NCBI RefSeq assembly: GCF_021869535.1
Contig: NW_026262582.1
Coordinates: 38,378,001 to 38,442,000 of the forward strand
DNA length: 64,000 bases
Origin: Mytilus californianus
Lineage: Eukaryota
Direction: 5' to 3'
Of this stretch, positions 2,052-33,282 are shown in pieces. Within the stretch, counting starts at the first letter, position 1. The number at the start of each line of letters is the position of its first letter. The notes under the pieces are model-generated. The model did no database searches, had not been told where the DNA came from, and saw only the letters and a program-made list of their open reading frames with translations. A program made the position numbers and the translations under genes.

Positions 2052-3550
2052 ATGACGGACAGTAAATTATGTGCTGGTTGTCAGCGTGGTGATGAAGATA
2101 TAAAAGCCATATCATGGTGCAGTGATTGCAGTGAACCTGTATGTAAGGCGTGTTCCAGAGTTCACGACAGATTGGTCCCGCCTCACAAGGTAGTACTGTT
2201 CCAATGCAAGAGATTCAACACCTCAGTTCTTCAATCCTTACATTGTCCAAGAACTGCCAGAATCATCCAGATCAAGCGATTTCACTGTACTTCTGTCAAC
2301 ATGACAAGGTAGTCTGCGTTTCATGTGTTCCGGTATCACATCAGAATTGCAAGCCTCTAATTTCAATTAAAAAAGCTGCTCGAGGCGTGAAAAATGGCAG
2401 CGCTATTTATGATCTAGAAAGAAGGATTTAAAACTTATGTCAAGTTACAGAGAACATACGGAGTCAAAGTGAGACAACACTTGTAGATTTGAAAAAAAAA
2501 TCGAAATTAAAATCAAGAAAAGGGTCTCGGAAATCAAGAAAAAAGTAATTGCTCATTTAGATACGTTAGAAACAGAGATACATAAAGACATTGATTCTAA
2601 GTATAAAACATGTACTGCGATGGCGTTCCAAAACAAAAAATAGCATCAAATCCAGATCAGAGTCGCTGTTTACATGGAAAAGTGATCTAAGATCACTGAA
2701 ACAACATATATCAGAAATCCATTTATTCAGAGTGGTAAAATTTCTAGATGCAAAAACTCACCGGAAAAAAATGGAAATCAGAGAAATCCAAACAGCTAAT
2801 GTTCCGATACTTAAATATCATCCATCAGAATCTGAGTCGAACATTCAGAAATTAGTCCAAGATTAGGTACAATAACGATAGAAAATGCTGAAGTCCAAAT
2901 GTCTGTACTAGATATCGACCAACAAGGTCAATTTCTCGTTAGGAACGACACATTCATTCCAGACCACGAAATTAGATAATGAAGTGAGTATCTATAGAGG
3001 TTGCTTTATTGCTGTTGGTGATGCAGGTATCTAGGTCATCGACCTGATATCATTGACGCCTGGTACGAGAATTGATGTTGAAGGATTCTGTAGTGGAATC
3101 ACATTTGTTAAGGACAAGATCTAGGTAGGAAATCAAGATCACACTATAACTATTATAGATATCAATGGTGAAGTTCTAAATATAAAACAAACAACATTTT
3201 GTCCTTATAAAATCTGTGCCAATCAGGACGGTGATGTCTATTGTACAGACAACAATAGTAATAACGTATACGTTGTTACATAGGATGGAAAAGAACGTGA
3301 GATATACAACAGTTCTGGCCTGAATGCTGCTATTGGTGTAGCTGTAGATGACCGTGGTGATGTGTACGTAGCAGGATATGAATCAAACAACATACATAGA
3401 ATATCTGATGATGGAAAGACACATGGCATTGTCTTGACAGCAGAAGATGGTATCAATGAACCGACCTGTTTATCTTACAACAATGAAACAAAAGAACTGT
3501 TAGTCTTAAATGACTATTCAAAATCTATCAATATCTATAAAACACAATAA
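2052..3550 (+). pseudogene. RING-less TRIM-like gene copy 1 (B-box x2, coiled coil, NHL-type propeller), pseudogene
   Basis: CAGC..C..C..C..C..H B-box and C..H..C.H..C..C..H..C motifs; propeller repeats (VAVDDRGDVYVAG). Acceptor ttacag lies just before ATG 2052. Lesions versus copy 3: 5-bp insertion near 2198, TAA near 2428, A-run indels near 2492 and 2640, internal deletions near 2950 and 3010, TAG 3032-3034 and further stops. Confidence 0.85.
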
Positions 3551-14416: not shown

Positions 14417-16042
14417 TCCGAGAAAGCCTGTATTTTTGAGTATCCCGATATTATGTGCTGGTTGTCAGCGCGGTGATGAATACATATCAGTTGTATCTTG
14501 GTGCAGTGACTGCATTGAGCTTGTATGTAAGACGTGTTCCAGAGTTCACGAAAGGATGTCCCCACCTCACAACTCAGTTCTTCACTTCTCAAATTGTCCA
14601 AGAACTGCAAGAATCATCCAGATCACAAGATAGTACTGTACTGCTGTCAACATCACAAAGTAATCTGCGATTCATGTGTTCCGGTATCACACAAGAATTG
14701 CAAGTCTATCATTTCAATTGAAAAAACCGCAAGAGGCGTGAAAGATGGCACCGCTATTTCTGATCTAGAGAGAAGGATTATCAACCTATGTCAAGTTACA
14801 GAGAACATACTGAGTGAAGGGGGGACAACACTTGTAGATTTAGAAAAAAAATCGAAACAAAATCAAGAAAAGGGTTTCGTAAATCAAGCATAACATTATT
14901 GCTCATTTAAATAGGTTAGAAGCAGATATTCATAAGGACATGGATTCTAAGTATAAAACATGTACTGAGATGTTGTTCCGAAACAGTAACAGCATCCAAT
15001 CCAGCTTTGACTCGCTGTCTACATGGAAAAGTGATCTAAAATCACTGAAGCAACACACATCAGAAATCCGTTTATTCCAGGTGGTAAAATTTGTAGATGC
15101 AAAAACTTACAAGAAAGAATTGGAAATCAGAGAAATCCAAACAGCTACTGTTCCGATACTAAAATATCATCCGTCAGAATTTGAGTCGAACATTAAGAAA
15201 CTAGTCCCAGACTTAGGTAAAATAACGGTAGAAAATGTTCAAGTACCAATGCCTGTACTAGATATCGATCAACAAGGTCAATATAGAAGTTATCACAAGC
15301 ATATTCATTCCAGACCACGAAATTAGGTACTGGAGTAAGTATCTATAGAGGTTGCTTTATATCTGATGATAGGTTACTCCTCTGTCACAGCATGGACACA
15401 AAACTTTCTGTTTGTACACTTGATGGATCGAACTCCAACGTGATTGACTTGGATTATTCACCGTTAAAGATAAGCTTATATGACAAAACCCATGCTATAG
15501 TATCTGTTGGTGGTGAAGGTATCTAAATCATCGACCTGACAGCATTGACGCCTGGAAGGATAATTCAAGTTGATGAAATATGTTTTGGAATCACAAGTGT
15601 TAAGGATAAGATCTGGGTAAAAAATAAATCTTACATTCTCACAATTATAGATATCAATGGAAAAGTTCTAAAAGTAATTAAAACAACATTTGATCCTAAG
15701 GATATCTGTGCCAATCAAGACGGAGATGTGTATTGTACTGACTTAGATAGTAATAAAGTATATTTTGTTACAGTGAGCGGAAAAGAACGTGAGATATTCA
15801 ACAGTCCTGACCTTAAACATGCTACTGGTGTAACTGTAGATGACCGTGGTGATGTGTACGTAGCAGGATATAGATCTAACAACATACATAGAATATCAAA
15901 TGCTGGACAGAAACATGACATTGTCTTGATAGCAGACGACGGCTTCTATCAGCCGAGTGCTTTATCTTACAATAATGAAACAAAAGAACTGTTAGTCGTA
16001 AACGACGATTATAAATCTATCAAAATTTATAAAACCCAATGA
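14417..16042 (+). pseudogene. TRIM-like gene copy 2, pseudogene with a divergent 5' end
   Basis: Same B-box, coiled-coil and propeller content. 28-bp microhomology (acaa) deletion near 14572, +1 in the A-run near 14844, deletion near 15280, TAA 15524-15526. No ATG at the paralogous position; a tttcag acceptor ends at 14416. Confidence 0.85.
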
Positions 16043-17936: not shown

Positions 17937-18100
17937 TTTACACTAGTAATTTTTGGGGCCCCATATAGCTTGCTCTTCGGTGTAAGCCAAGGCTCCGTGT
18001 TGAATACCGTACTTTGACCTATAATGGTTTACTTTTATAAATTGTGACTTGGATGGAGAGTTGTCTCGCTAGCACTCATACTACATCTTCTTATATCTAT
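17937..18100 (+). mobile_element. SINE-like / retroelement 3' tail fragment
   Basis: Reverse complement of 41515-41680. Ends ggagagttgtctc...acatcttcttatatct. Confidence 0.7.
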
Positions 18101-18375
18101 TTGAACGTAAATATAATTAAAAAAAACCCAGATTAATGCGATCTGTTAATTCATCGATATCATTAAGATTACTACATAGCATATCGCATATACAATATAT
18201 TGCAGGCACTTCCGTGCTTTTGTTTTTATGTTGGGTATGTTTTTTTTAGTTTTGAAACCAACAAATCGGAGTTTACCATGATACACAAAATGCAGGGAAA
18301 AGTATTACACATATGAGAGCAAAACATTGCCATGTGATGTATACACTGTATTCATGTATTTAGATAAGCAGTTAG

Positions 18376-18969
18376 AGATGATTTCAGCTGCCCCATTTGT
18401 GCACTTTCCATTTCTATGTAGCAAAATTCCAGCAGCGCCTGCATACGAAGTACATATCTCCCGAAGGATCCGATATTCCCGGGTTTGTATTAAATATCAT
18501 GATTTCCTTGATAGAGGGCTGCTGCTCACAAGGAATTAAAAAAAAAAAACAGCTCTAAATGGTGAAGTTGAAATCATCCCTTCGTAAATTTTACGGACGC
18601 CATCACGAGTTGGCCATGGTTGACCGTTATCGAATAACCGTTTCACAGATGATATTGGATATGTTCTTTCTGTCGCTACTGCAATCCTCTTTCATTTTCA
18701 CGAATGTGAACTACCGAATTTACCGGGTTTGTAATAACATTATTAACACGACGGGTGCCAAATGTGCAGCAGGATCTGCGTACCCTTCCGGAGCACCTGA
18801 GATCACCCCCGGTTTTTGGTGTGGTTCGTGTTGCTTAGTCTTTAGTTTTCAATGTTGTGTCTCTTGTACTATTATTTGTTTGTTTGTCTTTTTCTTTATT
18901 AGCCATGGCGTTGTCAGTTTATTTTCGATCTATGAGTTGACTGTCCCTCTGGTATCTTTCGCCCCTCTT
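18376..18969 (+). mobile_element. 5'-truncated Penelope-like RT fragment with TTAG target duplication
   Basis: FPFLCSKIPAAPAYEVHISRRIRYSR...VKLKSSLRKFYGRHHEL. TTAG at 18372-18375 and 18970-18973. The empty paralogous site gcagttag|tctgaagctgg is at 27623-27626. Confidence 0.85.
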
Positions 18970-20084
18970 TTAGTCTTGAGCTGGCATGTCAGTAACTGTT
19001 AGTAGTTCTTTGTTAATGTAATGATATGTGTGCCGCTTTCTCTAAAATGATCATCGTTGGTAATTTGTTTGACCATATGGTATATTTCTCATGACGGATG
19101 CATCAGAATCTCGTAAATTTTCTATTCCAATCAATTTTGATAATTCAATTAGGGAATTACGTTTTGTAATGTTTAACATGATTTAGTACTGCGGAGCAGG
19201 AAAACCGAAATTTGTAAAATGTATTATATATGTTATATGTACAGAGAAATATTTATTTATATTCGAATCCAACTGCTTACATAAGTAAACGAATTGGGAT
19301 CTAAAACGATAATTTTTGTGTGCACAACTAGATTTTAAAAGACTACTTAAGTATGTTCTACTCTTTCAATCTATTGGTAAATTCAGTACTGTTCAGACCA
19401 TCTGATTGCTGTCAATTAAGATCTGTTCAGTCTATGCCCATAAATTTTTTTAGTATCACACTGTTTTTAGTTGTAGACAACAACATTATTCTTAATTGCC
19501 TGAAAAGCATCTTATAAATACTGGATTGATTTCAAGCGAAGTGAACAAGACTGAACGAATTTATTGTTCGGACCTTTACATTATATCAGATAAAACTTGG
19601 TTCCCTGGCACAGAGGAACATGCACAGTAATCCAGGAATTTAATGTCCTTTTAATAAACTACTCATGGATTCGAAGATAAACGTAGATTGATTTGTTATT
19701 TACTTAGTTCTCTTTTCTTTTCACATGTTTTGGGTAGATGTGCATTGTACGCCCTCAACGCCGCTCTGAACACGCCTTGTCCGTGGGATCCTTGTGTATT
19801 AAGGATTTGTATAGTAATATGTACATCATTATACAAAGCCTTGGGTCACTTCAATTGTATCACAAGATATGTTGTGTCACCGGAAAAGCAAACATAACTA
19901 TATAAGCGACAATACATGTGTAGTTACCCACCTACTTGATCTACAATTTGGTTACCTACAGGGTCTAAAAATATCTTTAATTTCTTTATTTATCAACATA
20001 AACACGATAAATGTGATTTAAATTTTAGTGCCGATTCAGTCAAATCACCTTTGGAACATTTAGGCAGTTTTCCTTTAATCAAAT

Positions 20085-20181
20085 GAGAATTCCCACTAAA
20101 AACGGAAGTAATTTTAATGTGTCTAGGTTCATAACAAACAAAAGACACAGCTTTGTTTTAAAACAAACTGGATAGGTAAGT
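20085..20181 (+). promoter_or_regulatory. Candidate promoter and non-coding first exon of copy 3 (variant kB and ISRE sites, strong donor)
   Basis: GAGAATTCCC 20085-20094; AAAAACGGAAGT 20098-20109; TAG|GTAAGT donor at 20176, about 1 kb before the acceptor at 21171-21172. Confidence 0.45.
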
Positions 20182-21173
20182 TAATTCTAAAAATCATATT
20201 CAAAATAGAAAAGTAAAACTTCTAATGACAAGGATGACAATACAAAGTGTTTGTTTACGTCGGTAACCAAGATTATTTAAAATAATTACAAATCACAATT
20301 TCAAAAATAGAATCCGTTAAAGTATAATATGTGTTATGATTATTTGAAAATTACATTCTCAGGCATGTTGAGGTGTTTTTATATTTAATCAAGATACTTG
20401 TAGTATACGGACATTTTCAAGAAAGACGTTATTCGTTGCTGCATTATGATGATAAGAAATGAAGAAAAATAATGAACACGCTAACACTAAAGCTGTGTTC
20501 ATATACCAATTTTCCCTTTGAATTTGTTTATTTACTTAACTTCAAACGTGCCAGTGTTAATATCGGATAAATACGAATCGATGTTTTTAATAATTTTCTT
20601 GATATTTCTATGGACCAAAGGCGCTTGATGCATGGAACCCCCTTCTTTTTTTTATTCATATCCACGTTAATTATTTTCACTATTTGATGTTTTCTAACGA
20701 TATTAAAATGACAGTAGTTTGCACTTTTTTGTACTTTATCGTTCTCATTTCTATTTTCCAAAAGTTTTAAATACATTCTTATTCATTTTTTTATTCCGAC
20801 TGTTATATAGGATGTTTTATTTTCCCCTAAGATGTATTTTTCCTGTATCTTTTTTTTAAATTTCTTTATCTTGTGAAATATGTTTAGTTATCAGACATAC
20901 TATTATCTGTCGTAAGTAATGGTTAAGACTTTGATACTCTCTTGTTACATTTAGTTTTGACATAGTTATCAATGCACTTTTTTTTTTGAAGACAAAACTT
21001 TTAGATTACATTTCTGTTTTTTCTGGGGCTTTTCAGTCATTGTCGGATAAGGAGTTGAGACAGTACAGAGTGAACGCAATTGCTTTAAAAGAATGAAAAT
21101 GTTTTGATATAATTTCTTAGGAAAATATGCCATTTGATGAAATAAGGCATACGCTATGTATCTCTATTACAGA

Positions 21174-22827
21174 ATGGCAGACAGTAAATTCTGTGCTGGA
21201 TGTCAGCGTGGTGACGAAGACATAAAAGCCGTATCATGGTGCAGTGATTGCATTGAATATGTATGTAAGGCGTGTTCCAGAGTTCACACAAGGATGTCTC
21301 CGCCTCACAAGGTAGTACCAATGCAAGAGATGCAACAACTTAATTCTTCACTTCTTAAATTGTCCAAGAACTGTGACAATCATCCAGATCAAAATATTGT
21401 ACTGTACTGCTGTCAACATGACAAGCTAATCTGCGATTCATGTGTTCCGGTATCACATCAGAATTGCAAGTCTATCATTTCAATTGAAAAAGCTGCTAAA
21501 GGCGTGAAAGATGGCGCCGCTATTTCTGATCTAGAGAGGAGGATTTCCAACCTATGTCAAGTTACAGAGAACGTACGGAGTCAAAGGGAGACAACACTTG
21601 TAGATTTAGAAACAAATCGAAACAAAATCAAGAAAATGGTTTCGGAAATCAAGCATAACATTATTGCTCATTTAGATAGATTAGAAGCAGAGATAAATAA
21701 TGACATTGATTCTAAGTATAAAACCTGTTCTGCGGTGGTGTCCCAAAACAAAAAAAAGCATCCAATCCAGCTCAGACGCCCTGTCTACATGGAAAAGTGA
21801 TCTAAAATCACTGAAGCAACACACATCAGAAATTCATTTTTTTCAGGTGATGACATTTCTAGATGCAAAAACTTGCCTTAAAGAATTGGAAATCAGAGAA
21901 ATCCAAACAGCTACTGTTCCGATACTTAAATACTATCCGTCAGAATCTGCGCCAAACATTGAGAAACTAGTCCATGACTTAGGTACAATAACGGTAGAAA
22001 ATGTTCAAGTTCAAATGCCTGTACTAGCTATCGATCAACAAGGTCAATTTCTCGTTAGGGACGAAAGAAAGTTATCACTAGCACATTCATTCAGGACCAC
22101 GAAATTAGGTAATGGAGTCAGTATCTATAGAGGTTGCTTTATTTCTGGTGAAAGGTTACTCCTCGGTCACATCATGAAGAAACAACTTTTTGTTTGCGCG
22201 CTTGATGGATCGAACTCCAACGTGATTGATTTGGATTATAAACCACTTAATATAAGCTTATATGACAAAAACCATGCTGTAGTATCTGTTGGTGATGCTG
22301 GTATCCAGATCATCGACCTGACATCATTAAAGCTTGGTAGGAGAATTAAGGTTGAAGGATTCTGTGGAGGAATCACCAGTGTAAAGGATAAGATCTGGGT
22401 CAAAAATAAACCTGACACTCTCACCATTGTGGATGTTGACGGTAACGTTCTTAAAGTAATACAAACAACATTCGATCCTAGTGAAATCTGTTCCAATCAA
22501 GATGGTGATGTATATTGTACTGATAACAAAAATAGAAATAAAGTATACGCTGTTACATTTGACGGAAAAGAACGTGAAATATACAACAGTCCTGACCTGA
22601 AAAGTACTGCTGGTGTTGCTGTGGATGACCGTGGGGATGTGTATGTAGCAGGATTGTTATCAAACAACATACATAGAATATCTAATGATGGACAGAAACA
22701 TGGCATTGTCTTGACAGCAGACAATGGCATCAATGAACCGACCGGTATATCTATCAACAATGAAACAAAAAAACTGTCAGTCTTAAAAGACCTTTATAAA
22801 TCTATCAATATTTATAAAACTCAATGA
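21174..22827 (+). CDS. TRIM-like gene copy 3: 550 aa if one extra A at 21750-21757 is bypassed, otherwise a 208-aa B-box/coiled-coil protein
   Basis: ORFs 21156-21800 and 21700-22827 overlap at an A8 run. No other stops or frameshifts. Acceptor tattacag lies immediately before ATG 21174. All B-box Cys/His residues are present. Confidence 0.8.
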
Positions 22828-23759
22828 ACATTGGTTTAGGAACACTGTTGATTAGCGTATAAGTTTAAATATGACGAATAAAAAAATGTAGAAAAATATA
22901 TTGATATGCTAAATGTGCTAGTTGTAAGTAATTTTTCAAACTTGCACACAGAGCAAGAGAAGAGCCCTATAGCGCATGGGTTAACATATTTCGGTAACGC
23001 ATTCTATATCAGTTCATGAAAGATCGAAATTGTGAGTTAGTAATTTGGGACTTTATAATAAGACCAACATTTAAGAAAATATCTGAATGTTCCTTAGGGA
23101 ATCTAGTAGTTGCTTGATTCGATATGCCTGTGTCGGATCTTACTAGCGAAATGTTTCTGGAGTCTCAGATCTTAGAAAATTTTAGTAACTGTGTTTTTCT
23201 GCATTGGAATTATGTATTGTTTGTTCATGATTTTGCACAAGATTTTTACTTTATTTATTGTTTATGAAGTTGCTTAAAAAAATTACAGAAGAAATGCAAA
23301 ACAAAAAATAAATTTGTGATTTCTTACAGACATTTTTAAGAAAATGGTGGTTTAAACCTGGTTTTATGATTGCTAAATCTCTCATTTGTAAAAAAATAAG
23401 TTGTTTATAGTTCCGTTACATTGATTCAATTGGGTGAATATTTCAAAGAGACATAATTGGTTGAGTTCACTTCTTGTGCATAAACGGATAAGGGTTGTAA
23501 CTTAATCAATTTAGTTAAACCCGGCCACCTTTTAATGTACCTGTCCAAAGTCAAGAACCTCATTGTTCGTCAAGCATGCATAACTACATTAATCACAACA
23601 CATTTGTAACGACCCATCTACTATGGTACAAACATATTGGTTAGCTACAGGGTCTAAAAATATCTTTTTATCAACATCAACACTAATGCAATTTAAATTT
23701 TAGCGCTGATTCAGTCGAATCACTTTTGAAATATTTAGATAGTTTCCCTTTATTCAAAT

Positions 23760-31624: not shown

Positions 31625-33282
31625 ATGACGGACAGTAAATTCTGTGCTAATTGTCAGTGTTTTGATAAAGACACAAAAGCCGTATCATGGTGCAGTAATT
31701 GCATTGAATTTGTATGAAAGGTGTGTTCCAGTGCTCACGAAATAATGTTCCCGCCTCACAAGGTAGTACCATTGCAACAGATGCAACAACTCAGTTCTTC
31801 ACTTCTTATATTGTCAAAGAACTGCGACAATCATTCAGATCAAAAGATTGTGCTGTACTGCTGTCAACATGACAAGGTAATCTGCGTTTCATGTGTACCG
31901 GTATCACATCGTAATTGTACGACCGTGTCCATTGAAAAAGCTGCTAGAGGCGTAAAAGATAGCACCGCTATTTTTTATCTAGAGAGAAGGATTTCTAACC
32001 TCTGTCAGGTTACAGAGAACATACGGAGTCAAAATGAGACAACACCTGTAGATTTAGAAAAAAATCGAAAAACAATCAAGTTAAAGGGTGTCGGAATTAA
32101 AGCAGACCATTATTGCTTATTTAAATACGTTAGAAGCAGCGATACATAAAGACATTGATTGCCATTATAAAAACTGTACTGAGAGTGTGGCCCGAAAGAA
32201 AAAATAGTATCCAATCCAGCTTAGACTCGCTGTCTACATGGAAAAGTGATATAACATCACTGAAGGAACACACATCTGAAATCCATTTATTCCAGTTCTT
32301 AAAATTTCTAGATGCAAATACATACCAGAAAGAATTGGAAATCAGAGAAATCCAAACAGCAGCTGTTCCGATACTCCGATATCATCCATCAGAATAAGAG
32401 TCGAACATTAAGAAACTATTCCTAGACTTGGGTACAATAACGGTAGAAAATGTTCAAGTACCAAAGCCTTTACTAGATATCGATCAACAAGGTCAATTTC
32501 TCGTTAGAAACGACAGAAAGTTATCACTAGCACATTCATTCAAAATCACGAAATTAAGTAAAAGAGTAAGTATTCCCAGAGGATGCTTTATTTCTGAGGA
32601 TAAGTTACTCATGTTACTCCTCGGTCACAACAATGACGAACAACGTTTTGTTTGTACACGTGATGGATCGAACTCCAACGTGATTGATTTAGATTATTCA
32701 TCACGAGATATAAGCTTATATGACAAAAACCATGCTTTAGTATCTGTTGGTGATTCAGGTATCCAGATTATCGACCTGACAGCATTGAAGCCTGGTAGGA
32801 TAATCAGAGTTGAAGGAAACTGTAGAGGAATCACCAGTGTAAAGGACAAGATCTGGGTAAAAAATCAATCTTAAGTTCTAACCATTATGAATATCAATAG
32901 TAAAGTTCTAAATACAATACAAACAACATTTAATCCTTATGAAATCTGGGCCAATCAAGATGGTGATGTCTATTGTACTGACAACAATAGTGTTAAAGTA
33001 TACGTTGTTACATCGGATGGAAAAGAACGTGAGAAATACAACCGTCCTGACCTGAAAAGTGCTAATGGTGTAGCTATAGATGACCAAGGTGATGTGTATG
33101 TAGCAGGATATATATCAAACAAAATACATAGAATATCTTACAATGGAAAGAAACATGGCATTGTCCTGACAGCAGACGATGGTATCAATGGACCGAGCGC
33201 TATATCTTACAACAATGAAACAAGAGAACTGTTAGTTTTTAACGACGGTTCGCAATGTTTCAACATCTATAAAACACAATGA
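31625..33282 (+). pseudogene. TRIM-like gene copy 4, pseudogene
   Basis: Acceptor ttcttacag before ATG 31625. TGA at a Cys codon 31715-31717, +1 near 32085, +1/TAG at 32205-32207, TAA 32395-32397, TAA 32872-32874. Confidence 0.85.

What the first reader, a model, noticed from the sequence alone, without database searches (positions are those of the whole stretch)
21735..21800. Same +1 frameshift between coiled coil and propeller in three of four copies; the only defect in copy 3
Copy 1 reads CAA AAC AAA AAA TAG (stop 2641), copy 4 reads CGA AAG AAA AAA TAG (stop 32205) and copy 3 reads CAA AAC AAA AAA AAG. Copy 2 reads through (CGA AAC AGT AAC AGC). The copies are visibly diverged, yet copy 3 is open for 208 codons before and about 355 after the site, which is unexpected if it had been dead since the common ancestor. 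Options: (a) functional recoding by +1 ribosomal shift or polymerase slippage, giving a short B-box/coiled-coil isoform and a 550-aa full isoform (AAA-TAR is the known Euplotes +1 signal; not established in molluscs); (b) a selected truncated dominant-negative protein; (c) a recurrent slippage hotspot or homopolymer sequencing error. Other A-runs here also gain an A, so (c) is a serious alternative.
Basis: partly seen in the sequence, partly recalled or inferred. Interest (0 to 1): 0.8.

Follow-up and report, generated by a model that had tools for sequence, protein, structure and literature searches.

The report
Segregating frameshift allele in mussel gene
The extra A that breaks the best-preserved of four tandem mussel B-box/coiled-coil/NHL genes is real, but it is a broken allele carried by the reference animal: other mussels carry, and one transcribes, an in-frame version, so no ribosomal recoding is needed.

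Summary
The sequence observation is correct. Copies 1, 3 and 4 of a tandem Mytilus B-box/coiled-coil/NHL gene each carry one base more than copy 2 in the same A-rich stretch. This is the only lesion in copy 3 (A8 at 21750-21757).

Read-derived contigs settle what it is.
- X1 is a DNA run identical to the window everywhere, so it is probably the assembled animal. It confirms A8 at about 32x depth, which makes a homopolymer sequencing error unlikely.
- A DNA run from another study (X3) and an apparent RNA run (X2) carry G at 21751 and one base fewer. That reads AAC AGA AAA AGC, in frame, as in copy 2 and in all 40 full-length Mytilus homologues examined.
- The X3 haplotype has a different null, a CGA>TGA nonsense change at 21618.
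- The X2 transcript is intact over the part seen, 21222 to the stop.

Copy 3 has evolved under constraint (terminal-branch omega 0.44; 0.37 downstream of the site). Copies 1, 2 and 4 carry 5-9 other disabling lesions each.

The best reading is a polymorphic loss-of-function allele: G>A lengthened an A-run and one A was then added, in a dispensable, fast-evolving gene family. Programmed +1 recoding is not supported. Still untested: allele frequencies, and RNA from an A8 carrier.

The scan's index lists this same stretch once (s1-342874) and no comparable note elsewhere in the genome.

The parts
21174..21800 (+). Copy 3, upstream reading frame on the reference haplotype. It holds 192 native codons (two B-box-type zinc fingers and most of the long coiled-coil helix), then 16 out-of-frame codons and TGA.
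   Evidence: ORF list. Pfam zf-B_box at 40.1 bits, cut-off 24.1. Translation. A likely splice acceptor, tattacag, lies just before the ATG; this is read from the sequence, not tested.
21750..21757 (+). A8 run holding the one-base excess. It is the only disabling lesion of copy 3 in the reference.
   Evidence: X1 read-derived contig 21469-21810 is identical to the window at depth 32.5, with no alternative. X3 and X2 contigs have 21751 A>G plus one base left out at 21752, which is in frame.
21751..22827 (+). Copy 3, downstream frame (358 codons): the rest of the coiled coil, a linker and a six-bladed NHL beta-propeller.
   Evidence: Pfam NHL at 25 bits, cut-off 20. 88 Mytilus homologues. The homologue model matches the NHL domains of Brat, TRIM71, TRIM2 and Mei-P26. 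Terminal-branch omega 0.37, p=0.003.
21618..21620 (+). Arg149 codon CGA. The X3 haplotype has TGA here: a second, independent null allele, at a CpG.
   Evidence: 21618 C>T, 9.73 of 9.73 depth in X3; absent from X1 and X2. Codon assignment. Arg in 36 of 40 homologues.
21854..21854 (+). Replacement derived on the reference haplotype: Lys227 (AAA) to Thr (ACA).
   Evidence: X2 and X3 have A, as do copies 1, 2 and 4. Lys in 39 of 39 aligned homologues.
22778..22778 (+). Replacement derived on the reference haplotype: Leu535 (TTA) to Ser (TCA), in the last propeller blade.
   Evidence: X2 and X3 have T, as do copies 1, 2 and 4. Leu in 37 of 39 aligned homologues.
21222..23237 (+). Stretch covered by contigs of the apparent RNA run X2: the copy-3 transcript of the in-frame allele, coding region plus about 400 nt of 3' UTR.
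   Evidence: tables 2 and 8. X2 depth is 4.6-16 here and zero over the unique intergenic 19086-21076, which the DNA runs cover evenly.
2052..3547 (+). Copy 1, a pseudogene. A6-TAG at 2629-2643, four in-register stops, five other frame-breaking indels and a 141-nt deletion in the propeller.
   Evidence: Terminal-branch omega 1.0.
14451..16039 (+). Copy 2, a pseudogene that is in frame at the site (14979-14993). Start codon lost (ATC), two in-register stops, three frame-breaking indels.
31625..33279 (+). Copy 4, a pseudogene. A6-TAG at 32193-32207, four in-register stops and one more 1-nt insertion.
   Evidence: Terminal-branch omega 0.76.

Best explanation
Copy 3 is a live, transcribed member of the large Mytilus family of RING-less B-box/coiled-coil/NHL (TRIM-NHL-like) genes. 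The assembled individual carries a loss-of-function allele of it.

The ancestral copy-3 sequence at the site is AAC AGA AAA AGC (Asn-Arg-Lys-Ser). On the reference haplotype the G became A, which fused the neighbouring A's into a run of seven, and replication slippage added one more A to give A8. This order of steps is inferred, not shown.

The allele should encode a 208-residue B-box/partial-coiled-coil stub, or be removed by nonsense-mediated decay. At least one other null allele (Arg149 to stop) and one allele intact over the part seen segregate in the species.

The one-base excess at the same place in copies 1 and 4 is an expansion of an A5 run to A6. The stretch is A-rich because it encodes a conserved Asn-Lys/Arg-Asn/Lys-Ser motif. 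Those copies are long dead, so their shift has no function. No recoding is involved.
For: Shown:
1. A8 is present in read-derived contigs of X1 at depth 32.5 with no alternative branch.
2. X3 (DNA, a different study) and X2 carry 21751 G and one base fewer, which restores the frame. G at this position is the state in copy 2 and in 4 of 6 sampled homologous loci, codon AGA. All 40 full-length homologues align through the site without a gap.
3. X2 covers only 21222-23237 and not the unique intergenic DNA. It therefore behaves as RNA, and its contigs carry neither null lesion.
4. X3 carries CGA>TGA at 21618.
5. On the copy-3 terminal branch omega is 0.44 (p=0.003), and 0.37 (p=0.003) for the part downstream of the site. 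For copy 1 it is 1.0.
6. Copies 1, 2 and 4 have 9, 5 and 5 other disabling lesions. The Poisson chance of none in copy 3 at that rate is about 0.002.
7. The reference haplotype also carries two derived replacements at residues conserved in 39/39 and 37/39 homologues.
8. Three of four 1-nt indel positions among the copies lie in A-runs.

Context: about a third of Mytilus galloprovincialis genes are dispensable and often hemizygous (PMC7653742).
Against: - Only three individuals or samples could be laid, because one read-laying run was allowed. Allele frequencies are unknown, and A8 was seen only in X1, which is probably the assembled animal.
- X2 is labelled RNA only by a guess; I infer RNA from its coverage pattern.
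- At 21751, X3 shows total depth 16.7 against 9.73 for the in-frame contig, so a second, reference-like sequence may be present there. This is unresolved.
- The first 48 nt of the coding region are not covered by X2, so 'intact' holds for 21222 onward.
- No RNA from an A8 carrier was available: the raw-read RNA run X21 has no reads on copy 3. Low-level rescue by slippage on the A8 allele is therefore untested.
- The four copies form a star tree (15/12/17 informative sites). Whether copies 1 and 4 share their shift by descent, by conversion or by recurrence cannot be told.
Confidence: 0.8

Rival explanations
1. Programmed recoding. The A8 (and the A6-TAG in copies 1 and 4) is a functional +1 ribosomal frameshift or transcriptional slippage site. 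It would yield a short B-box/coiled-coil isoform and a full-length 550-aa isoform.
For: Three of four copies have the extra base at one place. Copy 3 is open on both sides. The downstream part shows purifying selection. Poly(A) runs can make ribosomes and polymerases slip (PMC4363877 and PMC4552401).
Against: - An in-frame allele exists and is the transcribed one, which by itself explains the conserved downstream frame.
- 40 of 40 homologues and 6 of 6 sampled loci in two other species are in frame.
- C-terminal-only gene models in M. edulis and M. trossulus are broken elsewhere, not here.
- Copies 1 and 4 have many other lesions.
- Copy 3 has no stop or rare codon at the site. The downstream RNA fold is unremarkable, z=-1.75.
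- A8 is below the 11-12 A's with measurable effect.
Confidence: 0.03
2. Selected truncation. The A8 allele is kept because the 208-residue B-box/partial-coiled-coil product acts as a dominant-negative or decoy partner of full-length family members.
For: The stub keeps both zinc fingers and about 77 of the roughly 100 residues of the dimerising helix. Two of the dead copies truncate at the same point. More than one null allele segregates, which could reflect balancing selection.
Against: - There is no evidence that the A8 allele is expressed or frequent.
- The same haplotype carries replacements of two highly conserved residues downstream of the shift, as expected of plain decay.
- The X3 null truncates elsewhere, at codon 149.
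- Copies 1 and 4 are already broken upstream of the site, so they cannot make such a product.
Confidence: 0.05
3. Artefact. The A8 is a homopolymer-length error of the assembly, and the animal really has an in-frame run.
For: A-run length errors are common in long-read assemblies. X1 may be the data set used for the assembly, in which case it is not fully independent.
Against: X1 k-mer contigs give A8 at depth 32.5 with no contig carrying a shorter run, and they match the window perfectly over 5.4 kb. The other allele differs by a base substitution as well as by length, so the difference is not simply a miscounted run.
Confidence: 0.03
4. Same verdict, different mutational route. The reference allele arose by a very short gene conversion from a copy-1/4-like paralogue carrying the expanded A-run, followed by T>A, rather than by G>A plus slippage.
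For: The reference allele differs from copy 1 at the site by a single T>A, but from the in-frame allele by two changes. The X3 haplotype has an adjacent TC>CA change at 21458-21459 that matches copy 2, so micro-conversion between copies may occur. Shared lesions in a star tree also hint at exchange.
Against: The tract would have to be under about 20 nt, because flanking copy-1 and copy-4 differences at 21742, 21745 and 21764 were not transferred. The nearby reference-derived changes at 21854 and 22778 do not match any paralogue.
Confidence: 0.09

Closest known systems
Polymorphic pseudogenes and dispensable genes of the Mytilus open pan-genome (Gerdol et al. 2020, PMC7653742)
   Same: A member of an expanded, probably defence-related family that is functional in some individuals and null in others, sitting in a tandem array with dead copies.
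   Different: Here the null state is a point lesion (a frameshift in one haplotype, a nonsense codon in another) rather than absence of the gene. Whether the region is hemizygous in the reference was not determined.
TRIM-NHL proteins (TRIM2, TRIM3, TRIM71/LIN-41, Brat, Mei-P26, NHL-2)
   Same: B-box zinc finger, a long coiled-coil helix and a C-terminal six-bladed NHL propeller. The homologue model matches the NHL domains of Brat, TRIM71, TRIM2 and Mei-P26.
   Different: No RING domain reaches threshold, so E3 ligase activity is not implied. There is no filamin domain. Sequence identity to solved NHL domains is only 15-18%. The gene belongs to a lineage-specific family restricted to Mytilus in the search.
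Frameshifts in coding mononucleotide runs (slippage hotspots, as in microsatellite-unstable tumours and in decaying gene copies)
   Same: A one-base gain in an A-run created by Lys/Asn codons; recurrence at the same run in paralogues; other A-runs in the same genes also vary by one A.
   Different: This is germline and segregating. The run first had to be lengthened by a G>A substitution.
Programmed +1 frameshifting (antizyme, Ty1, Euplotes AAA-TAR) and poly(A)-track sliding
   Same: An A-rich slippery string, with an open +1 frame encoding the rest of the protein.
   Different: The shift is not conserved across homologues, no stimulatory element was found, an in-frame allele exists, and the run is shorter than experimentally effective tracks.

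Membership tests
TRIM-NHL (class VII TRIM) proteins | N-terminal RING finger | tested here: not met
   Only PF25080 zf_RING-like at 19.1 bits, below its 27-bit cut-off, on residues 6-41. The first Cys/His cluster scores as a second B-box stretch.
TRIM-NHL (class VII TRIM) proteins | B-box zinc finger(s) | tested here: met
   PF00643 at 40.1 bits against a cut-off of 24.1, two stretches, the best at residues 65-97.
TRIM-NHL (class VII TRIM) proteins | Coiled coil after the B-box | tested here: met
   The AlphaFold model of homologue P0002 (40-sequence alignment, mean pLDDT 84.5) has helices 116-216 and 219-245. This was tested on the homologue, not on copy 3 itself.
TRIM-NHL (class VII TRIM) proteins | C-terminal six-bladed NHL beta-propeller | tested here: met
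   PF01436 at 25 bits against a cut-off of 20. Foldseek hits to Brat, TRIM71, TRIM2, Mei-P26 and NHL-2 NHL domains, E 1e-11 to 1e-13, target TM 0.7-0.8.
Programmed +1 ribosomal frameshift site | The shifted arrangement is conserved among orthologues and paralogues that are otherwise intact | tested here: not met
   40 of 40 full-length homologues and 6 of 6 sampled loci are in frame. The only other shifted copies are multiply broken. An in-frame allele of the same gene exists.
Programmed +1 ribosomal frameshift site | Slow-to-decode 0-frame codon (stop or rare codon) at the shift site, and/or a stimulatory RNA structure | tested here: not met
   Copy 3 reads AAA AAA AAG CAT, and the 0-frame stop lies 14 codons downstream. 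The downstream fold has z=-1.75, and 9 of 200 shuffles fold as well.
Programmed +1 ribosomal frameshift site | A frame-restored protein or RNA is produced from the shifted allele | not testable with these tools
   No RNA run from an A8 carrier was available.
Polymorphic (segregating) pseudogene | Both disabled and intact alleles of one locus occur in the species | tested here: met
   X1 carries the A8 frameshift. X3 is in frame at the run but has TGA at 21618. X2 carries neither lesion over 21222-22827. All are at least 99% identical to copy 3, whereas the paralogues in the window are about 83% identical.
Polymorphic (segregating) pseudogene | Evidence of past or present constraint on the locus | tested here: met
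   Omega 0.44 overall and 0.37 downstream of the site. There are no other lesions, against 5-9 in the sister copies. A private 3-nt in-frame insertion lies at 22528.

The most novel reading that the evidence does not exclude
The A8 allele is not simply null. It might be kept at appreciable frequency because it makes a B-box/coiled-coil stub that modulates full-length family members, or because polymerase or ribosome slippage on A8 gives a low, tunable dose of full-length protein. Either would make run-length changes in this conserved Lys/Asn-coding stretch a recurrent on/off or dosage switch in a mussel defence-gene array.
Probability: 0.05. Interest if true: 0.7.

Novelty: new member of a known kind. 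Interest (0 to 1): 0.2.

Why it matters
It removes a candidate case of programmed +1 frameshifting in a mollusc, which would have been remarkable. The replacement is ordinary: the reference genome carries a null allele of a gene that is intact elsewhere in the species.

The practical lesson applies to highly polymorphic genomes such as Mytilus. A single lesion in an otherwise constrained ORF should first be checked against other individuals.

The locus itself is a compact illustration of birth-and-death turnover. One array holds three dead copies and one gene with two independent null alleles plus an allele that is intact over the part seen and transcribed.

Tried and rejected
- **Sequencing error.** Judged unlikely from the X1 contigs and from the substitution that accompanies the length change.
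- **A family-wide hotspot or conserved shift.** I fetched DNA for two intact homologues and for four homologues annotated as C-terminal-only proteins of 361-376 aa, which might have been broken at the same place. All six are in frame at the site and the short ones are broken elsewhere. The shift is therefore neither conserved nor a general hotspot. It needs the prior G>A that lengthens the run.
- **Phylogeny of the four copies,** to decide whether the shift is shared by descent. The tree is a star (15/12/17 informative sites), so this is unresolved.
- **A stimulatory RNA structure downstream.** Nothing notable.
- **Raw RNA reads for A7/A8 heterogeneity.** X21 has no reads on copy 3 in the 6% of the run that was read.
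- **The scan's earlier notes by words.** Nothing relevant.
- **Orthologue in annotated Mytilus proteomes.** The best hit is 77% identical, so no orthologue of copy 3 is annotated.
- **Species of the window.** Not determined beyond Mytilus.

Full report
**What is there**

The window (GC 33%) holds four tandem, same-strand copies of one gene, 82-85% identical in DNA:
- copy 1 at about 2052-3547
- copy 2 at about 14451-16039
- copy 3 at 21174-22827
- copy 4 at about 31625-33279

The copy-3 product has a B-box zinc finger (PF00643, 40.1 bits) in its first part and NHL repeats (PF01436, 25 bits) in its second. No RING domain reaches threshold.

A word-based protein search found 88 relatives at E<=1e-20: the window's own ORF plus hits that, where a source names them, are all from Mytilus (M. 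edulis, M. trossulus, M. galloprovincialis, M. californianus, M. coruscus). Most are 548-551 residues long, and the best is 77% identical. The window is therefore from a Mytilus genome. No orthologue of copy 3 is annotated elsewhere.

I made an AlphaFold model of the best homologue from a 40-sequence alignment (mean pLDDT 84.5). It shows two small zinc-finger modules, a helix spanning residues 116-216, a second helix at 219-245 and a beta domain at 300-550. Foldseek matches the beta domain to the six-bladed NHL propellers of Brat, TRIM71, TRIM2, Mei-P26 and NHL-2. The family is best called RING-less TRIM-NHL-like.

**The observation**

Relative to copy 2 (AAC AGT AAC AGC, in frame), the other three copies each have one more base in the same 10-nt stretch:
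- copy 1: AAC AAA AAA TAG C
- copy 4: AAG AAA AAA TAG T
- copy 3: AAC AAA AAA AAG C

Copy 3 has 208 open codons before its 0-frame stop (21798-21800). Its +1 frame is open from 21697 to 22827. It has no other stop or frame-breaking indel.

The other copies are clearly dead:
- Copy 1 has four in-register stops, five other frame-breaking indels and a 141-nt deletion.
- Copy 2 has lost its ATG and has two stops and three frame-breaking indels.
- Copy 4 has four stops and one more 1-nt insertion.

One correction is needed. The site aligns to residue 193, inside the long coiled-coil helix, not between the coiled coil and the propeller.

**The decisive evidence: reads**

I laid 18000-23400 on four runs.

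- **X1** is DNA. It has zero differences from the window over all unique sequence, so it is probably the assembled animal. Its contig covering 21469-21810 is identical to the window at k-mer depth 32.5, with no alternative. A8 is therefore in the reads.
- **X3** is DNA from another study and differs from the window at about 0.8% of sites. **X2** comes from a third study. Both carry 21751 A>G together with one base left out at 21752. This gives C-AGAAAAA-GC, that is AAC AGA AAA AGC, which is in frame.
- **X2** has depth only over 21222-23237 and none over the unique intergenic stretch 19086-21076, which both DNA runs cover evenly. It therefore behaves as RNA. Its contigs differ from the window only at 21751/21752, 21854, 22778 and one 3' UTR site. 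Over the part seen, it is a transcript of an intact allele.
- **X3** additionally has 21618 C>T. This turns Arg149 (CGA, a CpG) into TGA, an independent null allele.
- **X21**, raw RNA reads, had no reads on copy 3 in the 6% of the run that was read.

**Which allele is ancestral**

- G at 21751 is the state of copy 2 and of four of six homologous loci fetched from M. edulis and M. trossulus, where the codon is AGA.
- All 40 full-length homologues align through the site without a gap. The consensus there is VSRN[KR][ND]SIQSS.
- At 21854 and 22778 the X2/X3 bases equal those of copies 1, 2 and 4. The reference bases are therefore derived. They replace Lys227 (Lys in 39 of 39 homologues) and Leu535 (Leu in 37 of 39).

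The reference haplotype is thus the derived, decaying one. The opposite reading would have copy 3 dead since the common ancestor and the in-frame allele a revertant. That would require a neutral sequence to escape every other lesion, with a Poisson chance of about 0.002 at the rate seen in the sister copies. It would also require the reversion to recreate the family's AGA codon.

**Constraint**

I assigned singleton differences among the four copies to their terminal branches.

| Branch | Synonymous | Replacement | Omega | p against neutrality |
|---|---|---|---|---|
| Copy 3, whole gene | 22 | 36 | 0.44 | 0.003 |
| Copy 3, downstream of the site | 17 | 23 | 0.37 | 0.003 |
| Copy 1 | 15 | 56 | 1.0 | not significant |
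| Copy 4 | 25 | 71 | 0.76 | not significant |

The in-frame allele fully explains that result. Copy 3 also has a private 3-nt (AAA) in-frame insertion at 22528.

**Why the same place in three copies**

The stretch encodes a conserved Asn-Lys/Arg-Asn/Lys-Ser motif, so it is intrinsically A-rich.
- Where the second codon is AGA, the run is short. All sampled loci of that type are in frame.
- Where it is AAA (for example AAT AAA AAT AGC in an intact M. trossulus gene), there is an A5 run.
- Copies 1 and 4 show that run expanded to A6, which creates an immediate TAG.
- The copy-3 reference allele is explained by G>A (giving an in-frame A7) followed by a gain of one A. This order is inferred.
- A conversion tract of under 20 nt from a copy-1-like donor, followed by T>A, cannot be excluded.

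One-base length changes in A-runs are the usual small lesion in this array. Three of the four 1-nt indel positions are in A-runs, and each is shared by two or three copies. The four copies form a star tree (15/12/17 informative sites), so descent, conversion and recurrence cannot be separated for copies 1 and 4.

The site is not a family-wide hotspot. Four homologues annotated as C-terminal-only proteins of 361-376 aa are broken elsewhere.

**Recoding**

Nothing supports it.
- The shifted arrangement is not conserved, and an in-frame allele exists.
- Copy 3 lacks the AAA-TAR motif.
- There is no slow codon at the site.
- The downstream RNA fold is unremarkable, with z=-1.75.
- In human-cell reporters, poly(A) tracks need about 11-12 A's for a measurable effect (PMC4552401); A8 is shorter.
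- Low-level slippage on the A8 allele remains untested, because no RNA from a carrier was available.

**Context and verdict**

Mytilus galloprovincialis has a very large dispensable gene fraction, often hemizygous and enriched in defence functions (PMC7653742). B-box families are among those expanded in bivalves (PMC8382680).

The finding is a real mutation. Its most likely nature is a segregating loss-of-function allele of a live gene, in an array where the other three copies are already dead. It is ordinary biology and a useful caution, not a new mechanism.

**Limits**

- Only three samples were examined, so allele frequencies are unknown.
- X2's RNA status is inferred from its coverage pattern.
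- Extra depth in X3 at 21751 (16.7 against 9.73) is unresolved.
- Zygosity of the reference animal is unknown.

Noticed in passing
window:21458-21459: The X3 haplotype has an adjacent TC>CA change (His synonymous, Gln96>Lys) that exactly matches copy 2 at the aligned positions. This is a candidate micro gene conversion between array copies.
   Followed up: partly
window:18000-19085 and 23249-23400: K-mer depths of 1e5-1e6 in the DNA runs, and abundant raw RNA reads (X21) with many loose ends and joints. These are very high-copy, transcribed repeats flanking the copy-3 unit.
   Followed up: no
window: copy 1 and copy 2, aligned to copy-3 positions 22306 and 21610: Copies 1 and 2 share a TAG where copies 3 and 4 have CAG, and share a one-A gain in the A-run at 21610. 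Copies 1 and 4 share another 1-nt gain at 21623. The substitution tree is nevertheless a star. This suggests a mosaic history (conversion or unequal exchange) or recurrent A-run slippage.
   Followed up: partly
window:14430-14460: Copy 2 has ATC in place of the start ATG, GAG in place of the CAG acceptor just upstream, and a 6-nt deletion after it.
   Followed up: no
L001, L005, L003 (M. edulis OY782969.1, 39.32-39.36 Mb): A comparable array in M. edulis, next to a tyrosinase gene. One intact 551-aa gene (P0002) is followed within 25 kb by two copies annotated only as fragments (a 134-aa B-box piece plus 362 aa; 376 aa), broken at places other than the A-run.
   Followed up: partly
window:22528-22530: Copy 3 alone has an extra AAA codon (in-frame Lys) in a propeller loop. 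Copies 1, 2 and 4 lack it.
   Followed up: no
window:25623-26408 (-): A 261-aa ATG ORF lies on the minus strand between copies 3 and 4. It was not examined.
   Followed up: no
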